DNA from: Andalucia godoyi And28
Lineage: Eukaryota > Protista > Jakobida
Length of the DNA: 64,000 nucleotides
Assembly (NCBI GenBank): GCA_009859145.1
Contig: VRVR01000038.1
Location: 124,001-188,000 of the forward strand
Direction: 5' to 3'
Shown here: in pieces, positions 50,893 to 63,702 of the stretch
How positions within the stretch are numbered: position 1 is the first letter of the stretch
How the letters are laid out: every line of letters begins with the position of its first letter
The notes under the pieces: generated by a model
Databases searched by the model: none
Seen by the model: only the letters and a program-made list of their open reading frames with translations
Told to the model about the DNA's origin: nothing
Made by a program: the position numbers and the translations under genes

Positions 50893-52104
50893 ATGCGCAT
50901 TACGAATTTTATCCGCCGGCTGTCGCTTCATGAGTACCAGGCGCAGAACTTGATGCGCGCAGCTGGGATTTCCGTTCCGTCTGGGGCGGTGGCGTCGAGT
51001 GCGTCGGAAGCGGAGTCGGTTGCGAAAACGCTTCCTTCGCCGCGGTCTGTGGTGAAGGCACAGATTCTTGCTGGTGGCCGCGGGCTTGGGACGTTCAAGT
51101 CTGGATTCAAGGGCGGAGTCCACATTGCATCGAGTCCTGCGTCTGCAGCCCAGTTTGCGGGCTCGATGCTTGGGCAGACACTTGTGACGAAGCAGACGGG
51201 AGCAGCTGGTCAACCGGTGTCGAAAGTATATATTGTTGAGGAAATTCCAGATATCAAGCGCGAAGTGTATTTTGCGATCATGAATGACAGAGCGTCGGGT
51301 GGGCCGGTGGCAATTGCATCTGCGGAGGGCGGTACTTCTATCGAGGAGATTGCCGCGGAGAGACCAGAGGCAATCGTGCGATCGGTGGGACACATGGATT
51401 TGGAAGCCGCGCGTGCAATGGCGTCCAAGCTCGGATTCTCATCACCAAAGATTGTTGATCAGGCTGCACGAGAGTTTTTGAGATTGTTTACGCTGTTTTT
51501 GGACTCAGATGCAACGCTCGTGGAGATTAATCCTTTTGTCGAGACCAAGTCGGGAAGAGTTCTTTGCGCAGATGCAAAAATCACAATCGATGACAACGCA
51601 TCATTCCGCCAAAAGGACATCTTCGCTGCAAGAGACTTCTCGCAGGAAAATCCGCTGGAGGTTCGTGCAGCCAAACACGATCTGAACTTTGTGGCGTTGG
51701 ACGGAAACATCGGGTGCATGGTTAACGGAGCCGGACTTGCCATGGCAACCATGGACATCATCAAACTGTTTGGTGGTGCGCCGGCCAACTTTTTGGATGT
51801 CGGTGGGGGAGCTTCAAAGGAGCAAGTCAAGGCTGCTCTCGAGCTTATCACGGCCGATCCAAAAGTGTCAGCAATTCTCATTAACATTTTCGGAGGAATC
51901 ATGAGATGCGATACAATTGCACACGGGATTGTCGACGCTGCCAAGGAGGTTGATCTTTCGAGAGTACCTCTCGTTGTGAGACTCATGGGAACAAATGTCG
52001 AAGCTGGAAAGAAGATTTTGAAGGATTCTGGGCTCAAGCTTGTTGCTTGCGATGATTTGGAAGATGCGGCAAAGGCAGTGGTGGACCTCTCGAGAAAAAA
52101 CTGA
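50893..52104 (+). CDS. sucC: Succinyl-CoA ligase beta subunit, mitochondrial
   Basis: Motifs [47 protein letters not shown] and [10 protein letters not shown]. Confidence 0.97.
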
Positions 52105-52542: not shown

Positions 52543-55239
52543 TCAGGATGGTGGATGAGAAATGGATGACCCAAACAATGGGCCATGAACGATGCGTCGT
52601 ATTACAACCAAAGAATCACAAATTGTACGTCGTCCGAAATCTCCATCCGAGTCCAGCGCCAGTAACAAGTCATCTGTACAACGAAGCAAGGACATCGCTT
52701 CGGAATGCTGGCGAATCACAGACGCACAGCGTACCGCTGTTTGCCCCGTCTCATTCGCGTCAATGCCTGCACGAGATGCAGACACCTCGAAAATGCGTTC
52801 CCACGTGACAAATGTTTCTGCGTCGAACTCGAAATGATCCGGAGTGTGTCGAATTCGAAGACCTTGCGATAGGCTGTCTGCGGAATACAACTTGCGAATC
52901 GACAGGATATCCTCGCGCGGAAGGGAGCGTTGTTCTTGCGGTGCGTAATCCTGTCGGAAAAGCACGCTGGCAAATCCAGCGCGTTCGAATTCATTTCTGA
53001 GATAGTCTGCAACACCCTTGGCAATAAACGGCAACCGTCTCTTTGCCTCTGAGAAGGCCCATGCAACATGATCTAGATCAGCGCTCTGCGATGCGCGCTC
53101 AGCAACGATCGACACTGTCATCGCATCCGACTTTCTCGCGAGACTGGATTCGAACCGCTGTCGCGCAAGTCGAATGGAATCTGAAATCTCAGCAACGGCG
53201 AACAAAATGTCAAAATGGTTCTTTTCAATAAGCTCCGAGAAGAGGGAGCGAGCATGCTCATCCGACAGTCTCAGCCGTCGAAACGATGTCTCCGACGGAT
53301 CGGCCCTAAATTCTGACAGCAGAACCGCCTGATACATCTCGGACAGAATGCGAAACTCTCTGGAATCGAATTCCACGGGAACCAAGCTGGGTTTCAGCGA
53401 GGATGACGGAGTAGAAGCTGAAGCAAAGCCTGGTATTGGTGTTGCAGGCGTCATCGGTGTGCATGCGTCCTGAAGTGGCAGCGGGGTGTACCCTTCCGAC
53501 TGATTGGGGCTCGGCGCACCAGACAGTGATGAAGACGACGAAAAGCTAGTAATCGCTATCGGATGAGGACGCCCCAATTCTACCAACTTCTTCGAATCAT
53601 CGGCAATCGTCGCACTCGCATTTGCCTCTGCGAAACTATCCCGTTCTTCTTTAACTTGGGGGATGTCGGCTGGTTCAAGATCCATGGCAGTTGCGCCCGT
53701 CACCACCTCTACTGACTGCTTCAGATCATCTGTTTTGCTTTCAGACGGCTCTTCATTCGCAACGAGCGAAGTTGCAGCATCATTTTCGATGCTACTCTCC
53801 TTCTGTTGATGCAAAAGCTCCTGCTGCTGTTGTTGATGCTGCTGGCGTATTTTTTGCAACTGCAGTTCTTGGAGTTGCTCTATCCTTTGCGCCTCCTGGT
53901 CTTGGTCGGTGAATCTCTCCACTTTCTGGTGTACGTGCGGTACATTGGTCGTTGTCTGGACTGGAGTGGAAAACTGCAAAGACGAAGCGCGCATGTTCGA
54001 CACGAATGGAGAGTCCGGAACCGTGTTGCTTGGAGTAGCAGCCGCGGGAGTCGGAGGAACCGACGACGAAACGATCTGCGGAGTGCTGGGTTGTTGGAAT
54101 AGGGGAGTTGTTGGAGCGGACGAAGGCGGGGCAGGAGCCGCCGATGATGATGAAGAAGAAGAAGACCCTTGCGGTTGTCTCGAAGTTCCAAGAATTTGCT
54201 GCTTTGGAGAAGCAAACATGACTCCATGAACATCGTAATTTGCAATCTGGTGCATCATTTCGTTCAAAAAACCCTCTGGCACGCTCTTTTCCTTAAGCGC
54301 GCTTATGAGAATCCTTCTCCACACGACCAAGATAGGCGCATCCAATGAATTTCGGACAGTTACTCGATCCCCGTCTGCAGTGACAAAGTCAAACGGCGCA
54401 CCAGTCGGATGTTTCCGCACGAATTCGTCAATCGAGGGCCGAGTCTGAATTGCTCGCAACGCAGTCACAGCCTCGGACGCGATCGACAGCACTTGGTGGC
54501 ATCTGAGCACCGAGAGTCCGTGAAAAGCAGAATGTTTTGCAGACGACATGCCACACACCAAATGATAACCAGCCCCTATTCTCGGATGCAAAGTGTTCAT
54601 CAAAAACTCGAGCATAGTTTGCAGCACCGGCTGTGAACCAGGCTTCTTCTGAATGAGCGCAAACAATTCCTCGAGGCCCTTGTTAATGTCTCTTTGAAAC
54701 TCTACGGGATTAGTCAGCGCCACATCGTCCGCTTCTGACGAGATTCCAGAAGCAGGTCCGCTGCCCATTACATTGCTCGTACCCGAAAATGCAGCAATAA
54801 TGCCCTCCACAGACTCCTTCTTCTTCTTCTCTGCGCTTGCTCTGGACCTTCTATTCGCAAACCACGTCAGCACTCGCTGTGCACTATCAATCAACAGCGA
54901 CTGCGCAATCTCCTCGGACCGCTGCCTCGAAGGATACGTCTCTCCAGCAAAAAACAACTTTTCCAATTCTTCGCTGATCTTTGCAGTGATTCGAGGAACC
55001 TTCTTCTTCCGGTCGTCAGCACTCCCCGCGCTGTTCGATGTCGGCGTGGCAAACCCAGAGGACGTCGGCCCAATGTCATTCGATGCACTCCCAGACTCAT
55101 TCGCAAGATCAAATGCAACAGACTTGCGCTTCCGAGTCGAAGACGGAGTCTCTGATAAATTCGCCATCGTCATCGACACATCGTCCACAGAAGCCGTCCT
55201 GGATATCGCGTCTGCACATTGAGGATTTGTCCCAGACAT
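52543..55239 (-). CDS. Homeodomain-containing protein, 898 aa
   Basis: KKKVPRITAKISEELEKLF..ETYPS...EEIAQSL...QRVLTWFANRRSR near the N-terminus. Confidence 0.82.
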   Translation of the reverse strand: MSGTNPQCADAISRTASVDDVSMTMANLSETPSSTRKRKSVAFDLANESGSASNDIGPTSSGFATPTSNSAGSADDRKKKVPRITAKISEELEKLFFAGETYPSRQRSEEIAQSLLIDSAQRVLTWFANRRSRASAEKKKKESVEGIIAAFSGTSNVMGSGPASGISSEADDVALTNPVEFQRDINKGLEELFALIQKKPGSQPVLQTMLEFLMNTLHPRIGAGYHLVCGMSSAKHSAFHGLSVLRCHQVLSIASEAVTALRAIQTRPSIDEFVRKHPTGAPFDFVTADGDRVTVRNSLDAPILVVWRRILISALKEKSVPEGFLNEMMHQIANYDVHGVMFASPKQQILGTSRQPQGSSSSSSSSAAPAPPSSAPTTPLFQQPSTPQIVSSSVPPTPAAATPSNTVPDSPFVSNMRASSLQFSTPVQTTTNVPHVHQKVERFTDQDQEAQRIEQLQELQLQKIRQQHQQQQQELLHQQKESSIENDAATSLVANEEPSESKTDDLKQSVEVVTGATAMDLEPADIPQVKEERDSFAEANASATIADDSKKLVELGRPHPIAITSFSSSSSLSGAPSPNQSEGYTPLPLQDACTPMTPATPIPGFASASTPSSSLKPSLVPVEFDSREFRILSEMYQAVLLSEFRADPSETSFRRLRLSDEHARSLFSELIEKNHFDILFAVAEISDSIRLARQRFESSLARKSDAMTVSIVAERASQSADLDHVAWAFSEAKRRLPFIAKGVADYLRNEFERAGFASVLFRQDYAPQEQRSLPREDILSIRKLYSADSLSQGLRIRHTPDHFEFDAETFVTWERIFEVSASRAGIDANETGQTAVRCASVIRQHSEAMSLLRCTDDLLLALDSDGDFGRRTICDSLVVIRRIVHGPLFGSSISHPPS

Positions 55240-55586
55240 GACTGCTTGCCTGTCTGCCTAGATTATATATAACTCTGAATGCACAAATAAACAAAACTCA
55301 CTGTAAAAAAATGATTAATTAAAAAAGAAATACTAAAAAAGATATGAAAATGTTATTGTTTTATTCATTTCATAAGAGAAAAACGAAGAGGCCCCAATAA
55401 GGCCAATATGAAATGACAGGTCTTTTTTTCGCCTTCTCTTTCCCCCTTCCCTGTGCTTCGTGTTACTTTTTGTCACTACAGCAGGCAGTTTTTTCAACAG
55501 TGATTTCCCTATCTACGACGGGTTTTTTTAAAACTTGGTGCACTGCTGGCACTTCTTTACCGGTTCAGCATTTCCATCTAAACGTA

Positions 55587-56462
55587 CTAATTTTGGAGAA
55601 GACGCATGACAATGTGATAGAACCCAAGCTCGTGGTTGGTGCGGATGCAGTTCACGCGGTACAAGTGATGGGTTCCATGAACCAGATCGTGTGTTCGAAG
55701 CTTGATCTTGAGTGCATAGTCGCGAACCGGCCCGGGCATTCCCTTGTTCGCAGACACTAAGTCATGAAATCCAAGATAGTATATGATACTTTGCACCACA
55801 GGCCCTTTGATCACTACGCGCTTCGTGATTCCCAGCGGAGTCGTAAAGATGACCGACACAGCCCGCGCCGAGTGCTGGTCCCAGTGGACATCCTGGGCAT
55901 TTCGAGCTTCTGCAGCAAGCAGCACGGTCCGTATGATTCCGAATGCTTTAGGGGTCTTTGGGTCGTCTACGCTCACATCGAGATGGACTGGCTGCTGGGC
56001 TCGAGAAGTCGAAACATCGTACAAGATACTCACTCGCTTTCTGCGCCGTTCGCGATTCTCAAGACCAGACTTTGCACTTTCTTCCACAAATGTCGGGACT
56101 ACGAGATACGGGGTGAACATCATCGACAGCCTTGACTGCATCTCACGCATCATCGTTGCCGATTCTCCTCCGTCCACATCAAACGAGTCGTCCGATACCG
56201 GGACGGAAACATTCGAACGCTGCGTCTCCTTCAATCGACGGATTTCCTCAGCGCGCCGAATCAATTCATCCAACTCATCAATCGGATCCACGCCCGACTC
56301 TGCATTCTCCGACGGTGGCTCCCCCGATCGCAAACCATGCTCCGAATCAAGGTCTTTGTGATCGACCGACGGATTCACACGAGAGCTCGAATCCGACGCT
56401 ATTGACGGCTCTCGGAGATGCGAAAAAAGAGCCGAAAGCCTCGTCAACGATTTAAATTCCAT
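55587..56462 (-). CDS. Stand-alone GspE/PilB N2-domain protein with a presequence-like N-terminus (candidate mitochondrial GspEN2), 291 aa
   Basis: C-terminal IIRTVLLAAEARNAQDVHW...YRVNCIRTNHELGFYHIVMRLL resembles the secretion-ATPase N2 pattern (IL..A...ASDIH...LRVST.PT..GE.VVMRLL). The ORF ends where the ATPase domain would begin. Confidence 0.7.
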   Translation of the reverse strand: MEFKSLTRLSALFSHLREPSIASDSSSRVNPSVDHKDLDSEHGLRSGEPPSENAESGVDPIDELDELIRRAEEIRRLKETQRSNVSVPVSDDSFDVDGGESATMMREMQSRLSMMFTPYLVVPTFVEESAKSGLENRERRRKRVSILYDVSTSRAQQPVHLDVSVDDPKTPKAFGIIRTVLLAAEARNAQDVHWDQHSARAVSVIFTTPLGITKRVVIKGPVVQSIIYYLGFHDLVSANKGMPGPVRDYALKIKLRTHDLVHGTHHLYRVNCIRTNHELGFYHIVMRLLQN

Positions 56463-57001
56463 CCATGAGGCCTACAAGCTCCTCACGATATTACAACTAC
56501 TAAATACAATATATTCAAAAACTGAAAAAAAAAAGAATTTAAAAAAGCGTCAGCAAATAATAATAAATAATAATAATAACAGCCATTGAAAACATGAAGT
56601 GGAAAAACAAAATGACGGAACAATGGGAGGGAAGCTATTGTATTGTGGCCAGGGTTTTCATTACCCTTCTTTTTTTCGGGTGGCTCGATCAGACCGTTAC
56701 GCGCTGCATTGATGCCAATTTCAGGCGAAACACTCAAGCTGCACATACCGGGGAAGCTTTGGAGACCACTTTTCCAAGAGATTCATAAGCAAAAGCTTCT
56801 TCATTAAGCTCCATTCCGTCGTTTATTAGCTTAGTCTTTTTATATTTTTATTAAATATTATTTTTTGAAGTTCTCGATTCCTCACTAACCCAACCTTGTC
56901 TTCTCGCTGTCTTTTGTTTTTTGCGATTATTTAAAAACAAAAAAAACAAAAACAAGACACACATTCAGATCAAAAAAGAAAAAAAGAGAGAGAAAAGGAA
57001 A

Positions 57002-60000
57002 ATGTCGCTGATTTCAAAAGTGATTTCGCGATTCCAGGATCTTGAGAATGCAAAAAAGTCAGAGCTCTCAGCAGCATATGAAAAACAAGTTGCCTGGCTC
57101 CGAGAAACAATCTCACAGTCGGCTCCTGTTCAAGCTGCACCTGTCACAGACTTTGCTGGGATTGTGTGCCCTCCAAGCGCCCGCAAGCGCAGAAGAGACG
57201 CCATTTCCGACGAGAACGCCGGCTTGCCTCCTCGACCGACTGCTTCAAAGCGAGATTCAGGCACAAGGAACGCACTTTCAGAAGTGGACCAAAACGCAAG
57301 CACTCGACGAAGCAGCAGACTTGCGCAGAACAAATCAAGACTTTCTGTGTCTGCGGTCTTGGAGTTTTCAGATGAAGTCCTTCAGCAGCAGCAAGAAACT
57401 GAATCATCATCGTCATCGCCATCGGTTGTTGGTGTTGCTGCCACGACTTCGAAATCTGCAGCGAAATTCGAGTCCTTGCAAAGTCGAACTGGGTCCCAAG
57501 AAACACAAGCGGAGTCTGAGACTGCAGAGTTTGAGAGATTGGAGCGGGAGTCTCTCGAGCAGGGAGATCCTTCCATGACTCGTCGCTCATCACGTCTTCG
57601 ATCGACCCGAACCTCAACATCAATAGCGTCGCAGTCGGATAGAGGGTCTCTACTTCCTGTTGCTGTTGTTGTTTCCTCTTCGTCTTGCGCGGAGTATTCC
57701 GATGCGGTGACTGCGACTGCAAGACCGAAGCGTGCGCAGAAAAAGAAGGATGCAACAGACACGTCTGTGCTGGACACATCATCTGTATCAAATGTCGAGC
57801 CGTCAGCGCACCGTGCGGACGAGAGTTCCGATTCAATCGGCAAGCAGGACGCATCCATGGACCCAGAATCAGAGAGCCAAAAGACAAGGTATTCTCTGCG
57901 AAGCTCCAACGCTTCCTTTTCCTCTGCTCTTTCCACAACTTCGTCCGTTACGTCTCGACGAACTCGCAGAACTAGGGCGCAAAAGGCTGCTGACGACGAC
58001 TTTGCGATTGCCGTTGCAAACGGAGCGGTATCGCATCAGGATCCCGCGACCCCAGCTGATCAGACGATTCCCTTAGAACATTCATTCGCCATTGCACAGG
58101 CCTCCATTGTTCCATCAGTCTCAGAAGTCGAAATCTCCAAGCCAAAAACGCGCCGCGGAAAGGCCAGGGCCTCCGTGTCTTCAGTGTCGTCGGCGGGTCT
58201 CTCTGAAGCGGCTACCGTTGCGGCCGATCCAAAGCTGACGGCCACTGATGCTGAAGCTGCTGCACCAGCACCGGCCTCGGTCGACGCCTCAGAGGTTGTT
58301 GTTGTATTGAAAAAGATGGATGTCAATTCGTCCATTGCATCAGAGGACGTTCCAAGACTGACCCGCAGACAGATTGCTCTCCTGCAGAAACAACAGAACA
58401 CAGTCTCTCATGTTATTGATGACGATGTTGCCTCCGTCAGCTCGCAAATCTCTGCAAAAGAGGATCGTGTTTCCGCACGACAGTCCGTCTCCTCGGAGCT
58501 TGCTATTCAAACAAGGGGTCGCAAAACAACGGCCACAACAACCGCTCGCAGGAAAAATGTCTTGGATGACACCACAGACATTGCGTCTTCTGATGCGGAG
58601 CCACTCGTGGAAGCAGAAAGTCCTGCAGTGGTTCCGGTGTCTGCACCGTCGACAGTCGACGTGACCCTCGCTGCTTCCTCCCAAGCTTCTGTGCGAGATT
58701 CTCTGGGGTCCATTCAACTGGATATTCAAACCAAACCAAAGCGAGGAGGTCGTGGAAAGAAGAAAAATGTTCTTGAAGAGTCCATTGCTGTCGAATCTGC
58801 TCAGCCGACAGAGGCTACGGGCACCAGTGTGTTGATGGTCACTATTGATGAACCACAAACAGAAGCCGCCGCCTCTGTGTCTGTTATGGAATCGGAAACT
58901 TCTGTCCAGCTTGATGTCCAGACCAGACCTCGCAGGGGCGGTCGTCGCATCGCAAAGAAGAATGTGTTGGATGATTCTGTTGCCTCCGAGTCCTCTGAAG
59001 CGCCATCGAAAACGACTGAAGAAGTCCCTCTTCCATCGGGCCCAGATCTTGCAGAAGTCCTTTCAGATTCTGGAAGTGTTTCATCCTCTAACTCTACAGC
59101 GGAGAAGCCTTCCGGAAGACCGAAACGTGGAAATGCCAGAGCCAAGAAGCCGCAGCATCCACCAACCTCATCCAGTTCGTCAGCGTCAATCGAAGAAGTA
59201 GACGTCGCAGTGGTGTCTGATGTTTCTCTGCTCACCGAAGCAACCGCTACCAAGCGGCCCTCTTTAGAGATGACTGCAACCGTGTCTGCGGCTGCCGAGG
59301 TAGTTGTTGAAGCTCCTCAGCCAAAGAAGAAGAAGAAGACGACAGGAACGGCAGCAGCAACAGAAAAGGATGTGATCTCTGCAACGGTGGAAATCAGCTT
59401 GATTGCAGAAGGCCCTCGCGACTCTTCCATTGTTGGCTCTGAGAATGAGGAGTTCTTCGATGTTCAGTCGGAAGGCTTTGAAATGGATCCTTCTGTCGTT
59501 CTTTCCCCAGCACCAAAACGTCAACGCCTTTCGGGGCAGCAAGCCGAAACCAGCTTTTTTGCACCAGACGTGTCGGATTCACCTCTTGTGATGCACAATC
59601 AGCGAGCCCCGTCCGGTGCAAGAGTACTGTCAGCGCAAGAAGGCGTGGAGCCAGTGGTCGTGATTTCAAGCTGCGAACCGGAGCGTCAAATTGTCGAAAC
59701 AAAGGATTTCCATGGTGAGGCCATCGAGATATCAGATGACTCAGTACCGGTTGTTGAGGATGCTTCGTTCATGTTGCACAAGACGGAAGCTTCGTTTTTG
59801 GCGCCACCGACGGCAGCTGCTCATCCAACTCCCATGCAGGATTTCACGGTTCACTCGATTGACGTTTTGTCCATTCCAGATCAAGCCGCCACCCAAGGAG
59901 CCGAAACCGTTTCACAGGTTCTCGCTATCGAGCAGGAAGAAGAAGAGGAAGATTACTCAAAGGCCGCATTCGAACAAAATGCTTCCGATGCTTTGCATGT

Positions 60001-61747
60001 CGAAGAGGAAGCAAATCCCGACAGAGATTGTGAGTTGCCTGAAGTTATCTTGGATCACGAGGACGTCGGAACTGTAACTCAAATTATTCCTGCCACAAAC
60101 ATTGTGTCCGGAGTGAAGTCTTTCCTGGATGAAGCCCGTAAGGCACAACAGATGGCAGCAACAGATGGCAAGAAGCCGCTTCAGGTCAAGGCGCTCAAGC
60201 TTGCCGAGGCTGCGAAGAAGGCAGAGGAGCGAAGACAAAAGGAACGCGAGGATAAGAGAGTGAAGCTTGCTCAACATCTCGAGATTGCGAGGCTGGAGAA
60301 GGAGAAGAGACAAGAGGATGAGAAGAGGAAACGAGAAGAGGACAAGATCAAGCGAGAGATGCAACTCAAGGAAGACGAAGACAAGAGAAGACGAGCCGTT
60401 GACGAAAAACTGAAGCGAGCAGAAGAGCGTCGTCAACAAGTCCAGCAGATTCTCCGGAAGAAGGATCCGAAAGATGAAGTGAAGGCTTTCACAGCGACCT
60501 CTGAGCAGCCTTCTGTGATCATGGACCTCGATGTGTCATGCATCAGCCATAACGATAGAGACAAGGCGAGCATGATTTTGAATGCGTCTGCAACAGGGAA
60601 TACATCTGTTTTGGATAGTTCCATCGTGTGCGGTCCCGCAGGAGGGATGAACACGTCGGCCATGTCTTCATCGTCGATTTCCCACCCACCCAAGTCAACT
60701 TTGGACTCCATCAAGAGCGCAATTTCGTCGCTGCTTCAATCCTCGTCGTCTTCCTCGCAGAACAAGCCAGCAGCCCCGTCGACACTGCCGATCTCCTCCA
60801 ACTTGACACACAATTCCACGGCTGCTGCCAGTGGCTCATCTTTCTTGTTGTCAACAAGCGTGCCCACGTCTTCCACTGCAGCGGTGTCGCAACTGTCGAC
60901 ATCTTTGTATGCGGAATCCAGAGCTGGGCTTGATGACTTCCACAATTTTGGCAGCAGTGCCGCCACAAAGGTCGGTGTCATTCCAGGCTTTTCCAACTCG
61001 TTCATGTCTGATTTTTCTGTCAACAACTCTCTTCCATCTTCTTGTGCTTCCTCTCCCGTGCATTCACTGTCGCCATTGAAGCCTGCCAAGGCGCCCCTCC
61101 GAAGCTCCAACACCGCAAACATGCCTCCTCCTCCGCCAACGACAACGGCCACGACTACCATGACTTATGGCGGATCTACCGCTGCAAGCATGCCTTCTTC
61201 TTCGATATCAGTCCCGCCCAACAACGTCTTTTCAGCATCAGCATCTGTTGTCACCGTCATGCCGCAAGTGCAAGCTGTTCTACCGTCGGCGCTGACAAAG
61301 GCGACCTCCATTGCATCCCTTTCCGCAGCCTCTACCCTTTCCATATCCGCATCCGCCGCGTCGCAGCTGGATCTTTCCAAGTCCCAGGCTGCAGGAACTC
61401 GTTTTGTCATTCCAGAGGACAAGGAGCACAGTGACTCGGAGGACGAAGAGGATGACGAAGAGGAAACGGTGCAGAAGAAAAAGTCAAAGGACGAGGATCC
61501 TCGGATTCCGTCGTGGGCACGCGGTGAAATTCTTGATGAAACGGTGAAGAACCAGGCGCGTTCCGGCACGGATCCGGATGAGATCTTCGGCGTTTCTGAA
61601 AAGTCGTGTGATCTCGAGTCCGTTTTTGGAGAGGGAAAGAAGCGCTACAAGAGAAGAACAAGCTCTTCGAACTGGTCCCGCGACCACTTCACAAAGCTGG
61701 AAGAACTCGAGTATAAGAAGGCCATGGGGTTCAAGGGGTTCCGTTAA
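57002..61747 (+). CDS. INCENP: INCENP (chromosomal passenger complex scaffold), ~1581 aa
   Basis: C-terminal IN-box IPSWA...DPDEIFG....CDLESVF.....YKRRTSSSNW, preceded by an E/K/R single-alpha-helix region. Confidence 0.9.
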   Translation: MSLISKVISRFQDLENAKKSELSAAYEKQVAWLRETISQSAPVQAAPVTDFAGIVCPPSARKRRRDAISDENAGLPPRPTASKRDSGTRNALSEVDQNASTRRSSRLAQNKSRLSVSAVLEFSDEVLQQQQETESSSSSPSVVGVAATTSKSAAKFESLQSRTGSQETQAESETAEFERLERESLEQGDPSMTRRSSRLRSTRTSTSIASQSDRGSLLPVAVVVSSSSCAEYSDAVTATARPKRAQKKKDATDTSVLDTSSVSNVEPSAHRADESSDSIGKQDASMDPESESQKTRYSLRSSNASFSSALSTTSSVTSRRTRRTRAQKAADDDFAIAVANGAVSHQDPATPADQTIPLEHSFAIAQASIVPSVSEVEISKPKTRRGKARASVSSVSSAGLSEAATVAADPKLTATDAEAAAPAPASVDASEVVVVLKKMDVNSSIASEDVPRLTRRQIALLQKQQNTVSHVIDDDVASVSSQISAKEDRVSARQSVSSELAIQTRGRKTTATTTARRKNVLDDTTDIASSDAEPLVEAESPAVVPVSAPSTVDVTLAASSQASVRDSLGSIQLDIQTKPKRGGRGKKKNVLEESIAVESAQPTEATGTSVLMVTIDEPQTEAAASVSVMESETSVQLDVQTRPRRGGRRIAKKNVLDDSVASESSEAPSKTTEEVPLPSGPDLAEVLSDSGSVSSSNSTAEKPSGRPKRGNARAKKPQHPPTSSSSSASIEEVDVAVVSDVSLLTEATATKRPSLEMTATVSAAAEVVVEAPQPKKKKKTTGTAAATEKDVISATVEISLIAEGPRDSSIVGSENEEFFDVQSEGFEMDPSVVLSPAPKRQRLSGQQAETSFFAPDVSDSPLVMHNQRAPSGARVLSAQEGVEPVVVISSCEPERQIVETKDFHGEAIEISDDSVPVVEDASFMLHKTEASFLAPPTAAAHPTPMQDFTVHSIDVLSIPDQAATQGAETVSQVLAIEQEEEEEDYSKAAFEQNASDALHVEEEANPDRDCELPEVILDHEDVGTVTQIIPATNIVSGVKSFLDEARKAQQMAATDGKKPLQVKALKLAEAAKKAEERRQKEREDKRVKLAQHLEIARLEKEKRQEDEKRKREEDKIKREMQLKEDEDKRRRAVDEKLKRAEERRQQVQQILRKKDPKDEVKAFTATSEQPSVIMDLDVSCISHNDRDKASMILNASATGNTSVLDSSIVCGPAGGMNTSAMSSSSISHPPKSTLDSIKSAISSLLQSSSSSSQNKPAAPSTLPISSNLTHNSTAAASGSSFLLSTSVPTSSTAAVSQLSTSLYAESRAGLDDFHNFGSSAATKVGVIPGFSNSFMSDFSVNNSLPSSCASSPVHSLSPLKPAKAPLRSSNTANMPPPPPTTTATTTMTYGGSTAASMPSSSISVPPNNVFSASASVVTVMPQVQAVLPSALTKATSIASLSAASTLSISASAASQLDLSKSQAAGTRFVIPEDKEHSDSEDEEDDEEETVQKKKSKDEDPRIPSWARGEILDETVKNQARSGTDPDEIFGVSEKSCDLESVFGEGKKRYKRRTSSSNWSRDHFTKLEELEYKKAMGFKGFR

Positions 61748-62112: not shown

Positions 62113-63702
62113 TTACTCATATTCTAGAGAATCATCAAGAGCGACTCCCTCAAGCAGCTTCTTGTTGATCTTCTTCTCCGTTTCAGTCATGGTGAACTCC
62201 TTCTTCAGCCGCTTTGCTTCTTCCAGCTGTCGTGCAAATTCATTCTTGTTCTTTTCTTGCTGCAAGCGCTTACGCTCAATGGCCTGTCGTCTGCGCTCTT
62301 CCTCTTCCAGTCCAATTTTCCGGAGCTGTTGGCCAAATCGCTTTTCATCCTGTTTTTCCTGTTCCTTTTGTTGTTCACGAAGCATGACCTGGGACTGCAG
62401 AGACTCTCTGATTCTATCCTTTTCCGCCTGACGACGAGCACGCCGCTCAGCTTCCAAGCGATCCTGCTTTTCGTGCATTTCACGCTGCTGACGCTCGGCT
62501 CGGTCCTCATCTTCCTTTGCCTTGCTGAGCACATTGGCTTGCACCGCTGCATTGAGCTGCATGTTCCGCTGCTGACGCGCAAACGTCTTCTCGAAGGCCG
62601 CAGTTCGCGCCTTTTCCTGCGCCTCCAATCGCGCTGCATATTCGCGTTGTAACCGCAATTCGTACTCGGCTTCCTGCTTTGCAACCTGCTCACGCTCCGC
62701 AAGGACCTTTACATTGAACTCCATGGCCTTGATGAACTCGACTTTCTTTTCCTCCTTTTTGCGCTTATCACGTTCGGCTTCCCTCTTCAGGTCTTCCTTG
62801 ATACGGGCAAGCTCGCTTTCTTCTTCTTTGCGACGTTGCTCGATTTCAGTCAGCCGCTTGTTCTGCACAAGCTCCAGCTGAACATCAAGCATCTTCTTCA
62901 CCTCAAGATCCTTTTGTTTTTGGACAAGCTTCTTCCTCTCTTCCACATTCCGCCAGTCGGAAACCTGTTCCTGCTCGATCACCGCGTACATCGCTTCAAA
63001 CTTTTTCGACACATCCTCCTTGGCAACCTTTTCCTGCAACTGGCGATCCAGTGCCGATCGGATCTGAATTTTCTGTTCATGCTTTTTCTGCGCCGACTTT
63101 GCTTGCTCTTGCTTATAGTGCTCAACATCCTTCTCCAGAATGCACGCCCACGCATCCTTCTGACGACGAAGCACAGACGACGTGACAGACTCAGGCCCAT
63201 TCGAGCCCCCTGTCCCATATCCGCGCAGCGCAGCGTCTGCTTCGACATAATCCGCCATCGTTCGCGAGACCATGCTGCTGCCGCCGTGGTTATTACTACT
63301 TTGATGATGGTTGTTGCCATTGGCATTGGCATTAGCATTGCCGTTGCCGTTGCCGTTGGATTTGTTCTCAGAATTGCTGATCTTGGGCAGCGATGGCGAT
63401 GCCGAGTTTCTAGCAGTAGAGCTCTTTGGCTTCCGTGAAGATGCCTCGACTGGGTGATCCGGAGCATTGAGCTGGCTCATAATGGCGTTCAAATCCTTTT
63501 CAGTCGGAGCAGACGTCTTCGAAAAGACCAAGTCTTCGACAAGATGCTGTGCAAAAGCAACCTCGTTTCCCGAAAGCTGGGTGTTATGGCGATGAAGATA
63601 CTTTTCCTGGATTCGCAAAAGCAACAAATCACGAAGCTTCGATCGGCGATCAATTGCAGACCGATCCGCATTCGACAAGCCCGAAGCTGAGCGCTTAATC
63701 AT
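62113..63702 (-). CDS. Coiled-coil protein, TPH-domain-like (possibly cilium/flagellum-associated), 529 aa
   Basis: Continuous E/K/Q/R-rich helix, aa ~185-515, with periodic LxxQ motifs; family assignment is inference. Confidence 0.75.
   Translation of the reverse strand: MIKRSASGLSNADRSAIDRRSKLRDLLLLRIQEKYLHRHNTQLSGNEVAFAQHLVEDLVFSKTSAPTEKDLNAIMSQLNAPDHPVEASSRKPKSSTARNSASPSLPKISNSENKSNGNGNGNANANANGNNHHQSSNNHGGSSMVSRTMADYVEADAALRGYGTGGSNGPESVTSSVLRRQKDAWACILEKDVEHYKQEQAKSAQKKHEQKIQIRSALDRQLQEKVAKEDVSKKFEAMYAVIEQEQVSDWRNVEERKKLVQKQKDLEVKKMLDVQLELVQNKRLTEIEQRRKEEESELARIKEDLKREAERDKRKKEEKKVEFIKAMEFNVKVLAEREQVAKQEAEYELRLQREYAARLEAQEKARTAAFEKTFARQQRNMQLNAAVQANVLSKAKEDEDRAERQQREMHEKQDRLEAERRARRQAEKDRIRESLQSQVMLREQQKEQEKQDEKRFGQQLRKIGLEEEERRRQAIERKRLQQEKNKNEFARQLEEAKRLKKEFTMTETEKKINKKLLEGVALDDSLEYE

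What the first reader, a model, noticed from the sequence alone, without database searches (positions are those of the whole stretch)
55587..56462. Split type II secretion ATPase fragment (GspE N2 domain): candidate mitochondrial T2SS-derived component
Seen: aa ~172-290 follow the GspE/PilB N2 pattern (helix-A…DVH, beta strands, then YRVNCIRT…IVMRLL). The ORF stops exactly where the Walker-A ATPase domain would begin, and the N-terminus (MEFKSLTRLSALFSHLR) looks like a mitochondrial presequence. Known: some jakobids, heteroloboseans, malawimonads and hemimastigotes encode mitochondrion-targeted T2SS homologues in which GspE is split into separate N2 and C-terminal proteins. Inference: this is a GspEN2 gene, which also points to the host lineage. 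The function of that system is unresolved.
Basis: partly seen in the sequence, partly recalled or inferred. Interest (0 to 1): 0.75.

Follow-up and report, generated by a model that had tools for sequence, protein, structure and literature searches.

The report
Known mitochondrial GspEN2A gene of Andalucia
This gene is the already published GspEN2A subunit of the bacterial-type secretion machine that the protist Andalucia godoyi keeps in its mitochondria; the one new point is that its N-terminus carries a peroxisome-type (PTS2-like) tag, not a classical mitochondrial presequence, and that five other subunit families share this tag.

Summary
The ORF at 55587-56462 (-) is real and encodes 291 aa. 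It is 100% identical to Andalucia godoyi KAF0852423.1, which Horváthová et al. 2021 (PMC8134430, Suppl. Data 1) list as "GspEN2A".

I confirmed the N2 fold independently. A domain-only AlphaFold model (pLDDT 87) gives 29 top Foldseek hits that are all PilB/PilF/GspE/DotB/BfpD ATPases (TM 0.51-0.62). Sequence-only searches find nothing.

The protein ends at the last N2 strand, about 36 residues before the Walker A position of E. coli GspE. All 18 homologues stop at the same place.

The "mitochondrial presequence" claim is not supported. Published predictors score this protein as non-mitochondrial. Residues 8-16 (RLSALFSHL) instead fit the canonical PTS2 nonapeptide.

A core version of this motif occurs in 55 of 62 N-termini of GspE, GspF, GspG, GspEL, GspEN2A and GspEN2B. 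It occurs in 0 of 36 control proteins of the same system (0.6 expected by shuffling). The system co-occurs with three Pex7-like proteins (Gcp1-3). I found no mention of this motif in the held literature, so it is a testable lead.

The parts
55587..56462 (-). Complete intron-less CDS of GspEN2A (291 codons plus TAA/TAG-type stop at 55587-55589)
   Evidence: ORF list. 100% identical to KAF0852423.1 as printed in Suppl. Data 1 of PMC8134430. Exact protein found on VRVR01000038.1, assembly GCA_009859145.1.
56415..56441 (-). PTS2-like nonapeptide RLSALFSHL (residues 8-16), inside a predicted N-terminal helix (residues 3-16)
   Evidence: Translation. Fits the canonical PTS2 pattern [RK]-[LVI]-x5-[HQ]-[LAF] with a hydrophobic residue at position 5, within the first 40 aa (PMC7710942). 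Conserved in 18/18 homologues and in 55/62 N-termini of six Gsp families. Helix seen in the AF2 model.
56289..56414 (-). Poorly conserved, Ser/acidic-rich linker predicted to be disordered (residues 17-58)
   Evidence: pLDDT <50 for residues 19-58. Variable in length and sequence in alignment A1.
56217..56282 (-). Conserved 'DELDxLxRRAEExR' helix (residues 61-82); function unknown
   Evidence: D62, E63, L64 and A71 are invariant in 18 sequences. Helix 63-82 has pLDDT ~80-85.
56013..56111 (-). Conserved block PYLVVPTFVEES...RERRRKRVSILYDV (residues 118-150), N-terminal to the N2 domain; function unknown
   Evidence: Translation. P118, V122, P123, R137, R140, I146, L147, D149 and V150 are invariant. 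Low to moderate model confidence.
55590..55985 (-). N2E-like domain (residues 160-291): helix, three strands, helix, then three long strands
   Evidence: Translation. Domain model pLDDT 87.3. Foldseek top 29 hits are all PilB/PilF/GspE/DotB/BfpD, TMq 0.51-0.62. hhalign register on E. coli GspE residues 90-181.
55240..55586 (.). 347-bp spacer between the stop codon and the start of the next gene (homeodomain protein, 52543-55239, minus strand); no room for an ATPase exon
   Evidence: ORF list. Pfam Homeodomain hit for the neighbour. tblastn with A. godoyi GspE finds nothing in the window or in the 9.7 kb beyond its end.

Best explanation
Shown: this is the nuclear, intron-less gene for GspEN2A of the jakobid Andalucia godoyi. 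[quoted passage not shown] It has no ATPase domain of its own. It belongs to the mitochondrial T2SS-derived system (miT2SS) of jakobids, heteroloboseans, malawimonads and hemimastigotes.

Inferred mechanism: the same genome encodes a separate GspE that starts about where N2 ends and carries the Walker A/B ATPase core. GspEN2A most likely docks non-covalently on that core and supplies the missing N-terminal lobe of the two-lobed motor subunit. In bacterial PilB/GspE hexamers the N2 lobe packs mainly against the ATPase lobe of the neighbouring chain (established knowledge of the 5TSG/5IT5/4KSR structures, recalled, not tested here). A break in the N2-CTE linker should therefore be tolerated. The reconstituted hexamer would then drive GspF/GspG pseudopilus assembly at the inner membrane.

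It is a PTS2-type tag shared with GspE, GspEL, GspEN2B, GspF and GspG. My best guess is that a dedicated reader, the Pex7-derived WD40 proteins Gcp1-3, uses it for targeting and/or assembly.
For: Identity:
- 291/291 residues match KAF0852423.1, listed as 'GspEN2A, Andalucia godoyi'.
- The protein is found on VRVR01000038.1 of GCA_009859145.1.

Family:
- 21 homologues with E<=0.01, including N. gruberi XP_002682830.1 (= NgGspEN2A), Acrasis, Pharyngomonas and Spironema.
- NgGspEN2A is mitochondrial by antibody, fractionation and proteome.

Fold:
- Foldseek results as described above and the hhalign register.

No ATPase part:
- No Pfam T2SSE or P-loop hit.
- All 18 homologues end at the same ...IVMRxLQN.
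- Only 347 bp lie before the next gene.

Complementary partner:
- A. godoyi GspE (KAF0852419.1, 348 aa) aligns with E. coli GspE residues 197-438 only (E 1e-26).
- The paper states that eukaryotic GspE is homologous only to CTE, and it proposes a GspE-GspEN2A heterodimer.

Motif:
- The core motif R[LIVM]xx[LIVM]xx[HQ][LIVMF] is in 55/62 N-termini of six families and in 0/36 controls. Shuffles give a mean of 0.64 and a maximum of 5 in 2000.
- It is in 18/18 GspEN2A homologues, most of them not in the paper's table.
- It is in only this ORF among 89 ATG-ORFs of at least 100 aa in the window.
- Gcp1-3 are described as Pex7-related.
Against: - No interaction between GspE and GspEN2A has been measured. 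The heterodimer is a proposal of the 2021 paper.
- The 2023 review prefers a regulatory role.
- BLAST extends the A. godoyi GspE alignment back to E. coli residue 197, so GspE residues 38-55 lie opposite the last N2 hairpin. GspE may thus keep a remnant of N2, and the two proteins may not be clean complementary halves.
- N2 homology is invisible to sequence-only methods. It rests on the predicted structure plus a weak profile alignment (probability 9%, E 0.0037, single-sequence template).
- Localisation of the A. godoyi protein itself is untested, and predictors are negative.
- For the Pex7-like reader idea, my own check was inconclusive. Only A. godoyi Gcp3 hits yeast Pex7 (3w15_A, E 2.7e-16), and not as the top hit. 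Gcp1 and Gcp2 hit generic WD40 proteins first.
- N. gruberi and G. okellyi GspE-GFP go to mitochondria in yeast, which has a working PTS2 pathway.
Confidence: 0.8

Rival explanations
1. GspEN2A is a regulator or adaptor of the motor, not its structural half. It would bind GspE or GspF transiently, for example replacing the missing N1E-GspL anchorage, and would tune the activity of a GspE hexamer that can form without it.
For: - The 2023 review reads the GspE-derived extra proteins as regulators.
- GspEN2A carries about 155 extra N-terminal residues with two strongly conserved blocks that have no bacterial counterpart (DELD helix 61-82; PYLVVPT...RRRKRVSILYDV 118-150). That is more than a bare N2 lobe needs.
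- GspL, GspM and GspC homologues are absent from these eukaryotes.
Against: - The domain is a full, well-conserved N2 fold.
- GspE lacks most or all of N2.
- In bacterial enzymes N2 is part of the nucleotide-dependent clamp (recalled knowledge), so a GspE without any N2 partner would be an unusual motor.
Confidence: 0.25
2. The N-terminal segment is, part of a mitochondrial import signal. It would be a conserved amphipathic helix read by TOM/TIM or by a processing peptidase, and its resemblance to PTS2 would be coincidental.
For: - The six motif-bearing families are the ones whose bacterial counterparts (or parent domains) are cytoplasmic or have a cytoplasmic N-terminus, which corresponds to the matrix side: GspE, GspEL, GspEN2A, GspEN2B, GspF and GspG. 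GspD, GspDL and GspDN1-3, which correspond to the periplasmic / outer-membrane side, lack it.
- N. gruberi and G. okellyi GspE and GspG1 reach mitochondria in yeast, and the first 160 residues of NgGspG1 import a reporter into T. brucei mitochondria.
- Several orthologues from jakobids and malawimonads are predicted to have an MTS.
Against: - Presequences are normally not conserved in sequence. Here R, the H/Q and the hydrophobic positions are kept across four unrelated protein families and four eukaryotic lineages.
- Predictors reject the A. godoyi protein and the heterolobosean ones.
- Acidic residues flank the motif (E2, E18).
- The motif fits a pre-existing, independent consensus (PTS2), in organisms that uniquely have three extra Pex7 paralogues.
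Confidence: 0.25
3. The PTS2 is functional in the ordinary sense, and GspEN2A (with other tagged subunits) is wholly or partly peroxisomal. On this reading the 'mitochondrial' T2SS has a peroxisomal arm or shuttles between the two organelles.
For: - The nonapeptide is a canonical RLx5HL at residues 8-16.
- GspEL and several Gcp proteins fell in the peroxisomal cluster of the N. gruberi proteome. Gcp1, Gcp13 and GspDN2 have PTS1-type C-termini with positive predictor scores.
- The authors themselves suspect a link to peroxisomes.
Against: - NgGspEN2A co-fractionates with mitochondrial markers, co-stains with MitoTracker and is in the mitochondrial proteome cluster.
- GspE-GFP fusions are mitochondrial in yeast.
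Confidence: 0.1
4. The ORF is a broken remnant (pseudogene fragment) of a full-length GspE gene.
For: It lacks the ATPase half. Pfam does not recognise it.
Against: - The stop position is identical in 18 homologues from at least four lineages, with 47-70% identity and 52 invariant columns.
- The ORF is intact from the first possible ATG.
- The orthologous protein is detected in N. gruberi by antibody and mass spectrometry.
- No ATPase-coding sequence lies nearby.
Confidence: 0.01

Closest known systems
GspEN2A of the mitochondrial T2SS (Horváthová et al. 2021, Nat Commun 12:2947; PMC8134430)
   Same: It is this protein. The sequence equals KAF0852423.1, the A. godoyi entry of the family. It is 54% identical to the experimentally localised N. 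gruberi member, and has the same length class, the same C-terminal end and the same N2-only architecture.
   Different: Nothing differs in the protein. I did not find this in the paper, its supplements or the 2023 review.
N2 (N2E) domain of bacterial GspE/EpsE, PilB, PilF, BfpD and DotB (Pfam T2SSE PF00437, N-terminal part; PDB 1P9R, 4KSR, 5TSG/5TSH, 5IT5, 5OIU, 8DZG, 6GEB)
   Same: Same fold and secondary-structure order (TMq 0.51-0.62, rmsd about 3.3 A). The helix motif 'A-x-D-[IV]-H' and the terminal '...RV..[IL]......G....V.RLL' strands are recognisable.
   Different: It is a separate polypeptide with no Walker A/B, Asp-box or His-box domain and no N1E domain. It has 11-22% identity only and is not detected by the Pfam model. 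It is preceded by about 155 eukaryote-specific residues with their own conserved blocks.
GspEN2B (paralogue in the same organisms; A. godoyi KAF0852697.1)
   Same: Also a stand-alone N2-derived protein of the miT2SS. Most members carry the same N-terminal motif.
   Different: It is much more divergent from N2 and shorter. The paper proposes that it pairs with the inactive GspEL rather than with GspE. It is not encoded in this window.
Peroxisomal targeting signal type 2 (PTS2) and its receptor Pex7
   Same: The N-terminal nonapeptide fits [RK]-[LVI]-x5-[HQ]-[LAF], has a hydrophobic residue at position 5, lies within the first 40 residues and is predicted helical. The organisms carry Pex7-related WD40 proteins (Gcp1-3) that co-occur strictly with the system.
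   Different: The tagged proteins are found in mitochondria, not peroxisomes. Position 9 is often I/V/M. The nonapeptide is very often followed by x-P-[RKN] (36/62), which is not part of the PTS2 definition. Binding to Pex7 or Gcp1-3 is untested.

Membership tests
GspEN2A (miT2SS) | Orthology to the founding members (N. gruberi XP_002682830.1; A. godoyi KAF0852423.1) | tested here: met
   Identical to KAF0852423.1. E 2.1e-72 and 54% identity to the N. gruberi protein.
GspEN2A (miT2SS) | Homology restricted to the N2E domain of GspE; no ATPase (CTE) domain | tested here: met
   Foldseek hits cover about 120 columns of PilB/GspE chains. hhalign maps onto E. coli GspE residues 90-181. No P-loop or T2SSE Pfam hit. 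The stop is conserved in 18/18 homologues.
GspEN2A (miT2SS) | Co-occurrence in the genome with separate GspE, GspD, GspF and GspG genes | not testable with these tools
   The whole genome is not available here. None of GspE, GspD or GspEN2B lies in the window, and GspE and GspEN2B are also absent from the 9.7 kb beyond its end. The published table lists A. godoyi GspD KAF0852335.1, GspE KAF0852419.1, GspF KAF0853007.1 and GspG KAF0853042.1.
GspEN2A (miT2SS) | Mitochondrial localisation | not testable with these tools
   Shown for the N. gruberi orthologue only. In-silico predictions for the A. godoyi protein are negative.
T2SSE secretion/pilus ATPases (Pfam PF00437) | [quoted passage not shown] | tested here: not met
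   No Pfam or NCBIfam hit even at E<=10. The protein ends at the N2 boundary, about 36 residues before the Walker A position of E. coli GspE. It is a homologue of one domain, not a member of the enzyme family.
T2SSE secretion/pilus ATPases (Pfam PF00437) | N2 domain fold | tested here: met
   Domain model pLDDT 87.3. The top 29 PDB matches are all from this family, TMq 0.51-0.62.
Classical cleavable mitochondrial presequence | N-terminal, positively charged amphipathic helix without acidic residues, recognised by TargetP/MitoFates/MitoProt | tested here: inconclusive
   No predictor could be run here. Published values for this protein are TargetP 2.0 OTHER 0.994, MitoFates 0.006, MitoProt 0.10 and TargetP 1.1 M 0.49 (RC5). 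The first 18 residues contain E2 and E18 and are followed by an acidic, Ser-rich disordered stretch. N-terminal regions of other subunits (GspE, GspG1) do import into mitochondria in heterologous hosts.
PTS2 signal | [RK]-[LVI]-x5-[HQ]-[LAF] nonapeptide with a hydrophobic residue at position 5, within about the first 40 residues | tested here: met
   RLSALFSHL at residues 8-16. Definition taken from PMC7710942. The pattern occurs in the first 40 aa of 3 of the 88 other ATG-ORFs of the window, so a single match alone is weak. The conservation across families is what carries the weight.
PTS2 signal | Pex7-dependent import into peroxisomes | not testable with these tools
   Existing data point the other way: the orthologue is in mitochondria.

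The most novel reading that the evidence does not exclude
The nonapeptide at the N-terminus of GspEN2A (RLSALFSHL) is one copy of a PTS2-derived recognition tag, R-[LIVM]-x2-[LIVM]-x2-[HQ]-[LIVMF], often followed by x-P. Six subunit families whose bacterial counterparts face the cytoplasm carry it: GspE, GspEL, GspEN2A, GspEN2B, GspF and GspG. The three Pex7-derived WD40 proteins Gcp1-3, which co-occur with the system, would read it. That would be a peroxisomal receptor-signal pair re-used to target, assemble or scaffold a mitochondrial secretion machine. It might stand in for the missing GspL/GspM platform, or couple mitochondria to peroxisomes.
Probability: 0.3. Interest if true: 0.75.

Novelty: already known. 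Interest (0 to 1): 0.3.

Why it matters
The gene itself adds nothing new. It is a published member of the miT2SS, a system that matters because it suggests the last eukaryotic common ancestor's mitochondrion could export folded proteins, and whose substrate and function are still unknown.

What may matter is the shared PTS2-like tag. It gives a concrete, cheap hypothesis for three open points raised in the 2021 paper:
- how subunits without recognisable presequences are targeted;
- what the three Pex7 paralogues Gcp1-3 do;
- why the system shows hints of a peroxisomal connection.

Peptide-binding and point-mutant localisation experiments could settle it.

Tried and rejected
1. Sequence-only annotation. 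Pfam, NCBIfam, phmmer against PDB and a family profile against PDB gave no relevant hit. The exhaustive phmmer over 1.84 billion representatives returned only 15 proteins, all GspEN2A-type sequences or fragments, and no bacterial GspE.

2. Pairwise Smith-Waterman of residues 151-291 against E. coli GspE scored 42, z=2.1, which is not significant. hhalign against a single E. coli sequence gave the right register but only 9% probability.

3. Possible linkage of the two 'halves'.
- The GenBank accession of A. godoyi GspE (KAF0852419.1) is only 4 away from GspEN2A, so I tested for physical proximity.
- tblastn found no GspE, GspD or GspEN2B in the window, and no GspE or GspEN2B in the next 2.4 kb.
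- An ORF read of the following 7 kb shows a cyclase, a P-type ATPase and a prolyl oligopeptidase.
- The idea is rejected. My inference is that the record annotates only a curated subset of genes, since only 3 genes are called in 20 kb. Neighbouring accession numbers therefore do not mean neighbouring genes.

4. An exact look-up of the cyclase ORF to walk further along the contig failed because no gene with that product is on record.

5. An independent check that Gcp1-3 are Pex7-like, by phmmer against PDB, was swamped by generic WD40 hits. Only Gcp3 lists Pex7 (3w15_A). The result is inconclusive.

6. Pseudogene or frameshift explanations for the missing ATPase half are rejected.

7. The literature search for prior mention of the motif used the terms miT2SS, PTS2, GspEN2A, Pex7 and Naegleria, plus the supplements of the 2021 paper. 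Nothing was found. The library is incomplete, so this is not proof of novelty.
Full report
**1. The observation**

The window holds an ATG-initiated ORF of 291 codons at 55587-56462 on the minus strand. An in-frame stop lies four codons upstream of the ATG, so this is the first possible start. The window has 44-53% G+C and carries long intron-less genes with low-complexity regions, so it looks like a compact eukaryotic nuclear genome. Pfam, NCBIfam and phmmer against PDB sequences give no meaningful hit for the protein.

**2. Identity**

A search of 5.8 billion proteins returned 21 homologues. They include proteins of Naegleria gruberi (XP_002682830.1), N. lovaniensis, Acrasis kona, Pharyngomonas and Spironema, plus metagenomic sequences, one of them labelled 'type II secretory ATPase GspE...-like'.

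Supplementary Data 1 of Horváthová et al. 2021 (PMC8134430) lists XP_002682830.1 as N. gruberi GspEN2A. Under the same heading it lists 'Andalucia godoyi KAF0852423.1' with a sequence that equals the window ORF at all 291 positions. The exact protein is recorded on contig VRVR01000038.1 of assembly GCA_009859145.1, and the window corresponds to bases 124001-188000 of that contig.

So the window is A. godoyi nuclear DNA, and the gene is a published member of the GspEN2A family.

**3. Independent test of the N2 claim**

- A full-length AlphaFold2 model built on 18 homologues is confident only for short N-terminal helices and for residues ~160-290. Its 20 best PDB matches are all PilB, EpsE/GspE, BfpD or DotB.
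- A domain-only model (residues 155-291) has pLDDT 87.3 and pTM 0.84.
- Its first 29 Foldseek matches are all secretion or pilus ATPases (PilB, PilF, EpsE/GspE, DotB, BfpD). They have probability 1.00, E down to 1.8e-5, TM 0.51-0.62 normalised to the query, and rmsd 3.2-3.8 A over about 120 columns. The next matches are PAS/LOV/Cache-type domains with E>=0.02 and TM<=0.39.
- hhalign of the family alignment against E. coli K-12 GspE (fetched) places residues 154-244 on GspE residues 90-181, the start of the Pfam T2SSE region. 'TPKAFGIIRTVLLAAEARNAQDVHWD' lies opposite 'APVIRLINAILSEAIKETASDIHIE'. The score is weak (E 0.0037, probability 9%) because the template is a single sequence.
- A plain local alignment is not significant (z=2.1).

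The N2 assignment therefore rests on predicted structure plus register, in agreement with the HHpred result reported by the authors.

**4. Where the protein ends**

By eye, the C-terminus ...YRVNCIRTNHELGFYHIVMRLLQN lines up with ...VRVSTLPSIYGERAVLRLLDK of E. coli GspE (residues ~190-213). Walker A (GPTGSGKS) starts at residue 249. The ORF thus stops at the last strand of N2, about 36 residues before the P-loop. This is right at the domain level but not 'exactly' at Walker A.

All 18 aligned homologues stop at the same position. Only 347 bp separate the stop from the next gene, which encodes a homeodomain protein. The absence of an ATPase half is therefore ancient and real, not a frameshift or a missed exon.

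A. godoyi GspE (KAF0852419.1, 348 aa) aligns with E. coli GspE residues 197-438 (E 1e-26). It is the complementary part. The alignment reaches back over the last N2 hairpin (GspE residues 38-55), so a small overlap between the two proteins cannot be excluded.

**5. Context**

The neighbours are ordinary nuclear genes:
- succinyl-CoA ligase beta (50893-52104, +);
- a homeodomain protein (52543-55239, -);
- an INCENP-like protein (56999-61747, +);
- a TPH-domain protein (62113-63702, -);
- beyond the window, an adenylate/guanylate cyclase.

No GspE, GspD or GspEN2B sequence is in the window. GspE is also absent from the 9.7 kb after the window. The near-consecutive accession numbers of GspE and GspEN2A do not reflect physical linkage. 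Only a curated subset of genes appears to be annotated in the record (3 called genes in 20 kb).

**6. The N-terminus**

The published table gives the following for this very protein: TargetP 2.0 'OTHER' 0.994, MitoProt 0.10, MitoFates 'no' 0.006, WoLF PSORT nuclear, and only a weak TargetP 1.1 call (0.49, class 5).

Residues 8-16, RLSALFSHL (window 56415-56441), fit the canonical PTS2 nonapeptide instead. That pattern is [RK]-[LVI]-x5-[HQ]-[LAF] with a hydrophobic fifth residue, within the first 40 residues (definition from PMC7710942). The segment is predicted to be helical.

A single match means little. The loose pattern occurs in the first 40 residues of 3 of the 88 other ATG-ORFs of the window.

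**7. The motif is shared across subunit families**

I read all but the last part of Supplementary Data 1 (the rest of Gcp16 was not read). A core version of the motif, R-[LIVM]-x2-[LIVM]-x2-[HQ]-[LIVMF], appears near the N-terminus in these families:

| Family | Sequences with the core motif |
|---|---|
| GspE | 8/8 |
| GspF | 8/8 |
| GspG | 14/16 |
| GspEL | 9/10 |
| GspEN2A | 8/10 |
| GspEN2B | 8/10 |
| Total | 55/62 (59/62 if position 2 or 5 is relaxed) |

- The motif is absent from 36/36 control sequences of the same system (GspD, GspDL, GspDN1-3, Gcp1, 2, 3, 5, 7, 10, 11).
- Shuffling the same 62 N-termini gives 0.64 matches on average, with a maximum of 5 in 2000 trials.
- The stringent literature PTS2 pattern matches 34/62, against 3.6 expected.
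- In 36/62 sequences the nonapeptide is followed by x-P, against 0.04 expected.
- All 18 GspEN2A homologues from the database search, most of them not in the paper's table, carry the motif upstream of the conserved DELD box.

The core pattern was defined after seeing the data, so its exact counts are descriptive. The PTS2 pattern and the comparison between families are independent of that choice.

The tagged families are the ones whose bacterial counterparts, or parent domains, are cytoplasmic or have a cytoplasmic N-terminus. The secretin-derived families are untagged.

**8. Why this may matter**

The same organisms uniquely possess three WD40 proteins, Gcp1-3, that the authors place next to Pex7, the PTS2 receptor. 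The authors list this as a hint of a peroxisomal link. I found no mention of a PTS2-like motif on the Gsp proteins in:
- the main text, where 'PTS2' occurs once, in the Pex7 sentence;
- the nine supplementary files;
- the 2023 mBio review;
- any other held paper that mentions miT2SS or GspEN2A.

A natural hypothesis is that Gcp1-3 read this tag.

Evidence against a conventional PTS2 function:
- NgGspEN2A is mitochondrial by antibody, fractionation and proteomics.
- GspE-GFP fusions go to mitochondria in yeast.

My own attempt to confirm the Pex7 affinity of A. godoyi Gcp1-3 against PDB sequences was inconclusive.

The alternative is that the helix is a conserved element of a mitochondrial import signal.

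**9. Mechanism**

- Shown: the identity of the gene, the N2 fold, the lack of an ATPase domain and the conserved end.
- Taken from the paper's data: a separate CTE-type GspE and the other Gsp genes exist in the same genome, and the Naegleria orthologue is mitochondrial.
- Inferred: GspEN2A docks on GspE to rebuild the two-lobed motor subunit of a hexamer that powers GspG pseudopilus assembly on GspF. This is the authors' proposal. It is structurally plausible because in bacterial hexamers N2 contacts mainly the neighbouring chain's ATPase lobe (recalled knowledge).
- Also inferred: the roles of the two further conserved blocks (residues 61-82 and 118-150) and of the PTS2-like tag.

**10. Verdict**

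The finding is already published down to the accession number, so its novelty is nil and its interest low. The shared PTS2-like tag is a side result that I could not find described. It turns the unexplained Pex7 paralogues and the targeting problem of this system into direct experiments.

Noticed in passing
window 56415-56441 (-); N-termini of GspE, GspF, GspG, GspEL, GspEN2A, GspEN2B in Suppl. Data 1 of PMC8134430: A PTS2-like nonapeptide (R-[LIVM]-x2-[LIVM]-x2-[HQ]-[LIVMF], often followed by x-P-[RKN]) is shared by six subunit families of the mitochondrial T2SS (55/62). It is absent from the secretin-derived and Gcp control families (0/36). It is not mentioned in the held literature.
   Followed up: yes
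Suppl. Data 1 of PMC8134430: Gcp9, Gcp12, Gcp13, Naegleria Gcp6, Reclinomonas Gcp16: Related short motifs occur in some co-occurring proteins: 'hhFPRh' near the N-terminus of Gcp9 and about 80-100 residues into Gcp12; 'hH.hh..hLPKPNKGLWEP' in Gcp13; full RLx5HV in Naegleria Gcp6; RAx5QLxP in Reclinomonas Gcp16. They may be degenerate versions of the same tag.
   Followed up: no
Suppl. Data 1 of PMC8134430: GspDN2, Gcp1, Gcp13, some Gcp8 and Gcp2: Several untagged components end in PTS1-type tripeptides (-SRL, -SKL, -PRL, -ARL, -ANL) with positive PTS1-predictor scores, including the secretin N-domain protein GspDN2. The system thus carries both kinds of peroxisome-type signal.
   Followed up: no
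window 56217-56282 (-) and 56013-56111 (-): Two blocks of GspEN2A outside the N2 domain are almost invariant in 18 homologues: the DELDxLxRRAEE helix and PYLVVPT...RERRRKRVSILYDV. They have no bacterial counterpart and no assigned function. They are candidates for partner-binding sites.
   Followed up: partly
A. godoyi GspE residues 38-55 (not in window): BLAST aligns 'TTLTASVFSRALERIYNK' of the separate GspE with the last N2 hairpin of E. coli GspE ('STLPSIYGERAVLRLLDK'). The ATPase protein may therefore keep a remnant of N2, and the two proteins may overlap rather than being a clean split.
   Followed up: partly
A. godoyi KAF0852697.1 and G. okellyi GspEN2B: These two GspEN2B entries lack the N-terminal motif that the other eight species have, and they start close to the conserved 'FRTLHTG' block. 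Their annotated starts may be truncated, or the tag was lost.
   Followed up: no
window 56921-61747 (+), probable start 56999: Divergently transcribed 1582-1608-aa low-complexity protein with a C-terminal INCENP ARK-binding (IN-box) domain (Pfam E 1.7e-10). It is not among the genes called in the public record for this stretch.
   Followed up: partly
window 52543-55239 (-): 898-aa protein with a single homeodomain (residues 83-133, Pfam E 4e-8), immediately downstream of GspEN2A on the same strand.
   Followed up: partly
window 50893-52104 (+): Succinyl-CoA ligase beta subunit (ATP-grasp_2 plus Ligase_CoA). Its N-terminus (RLSLHEYQA, residues 9-17) matches the loose PTS2 pattern but has no hydrophobic residue at position 5. 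This shows how easily the loose pattern arises by chance.
   Followed up: partly
P0002 (JGI metagenome, 250 aa): An environmental GspEN2A that is 70% identical to the Andalucia protein, clearly closer than any cultured organism's sequence (next is 61%). It points to an unsampled Andalucia-like jakobid in metagenomes.
   Followed up: no
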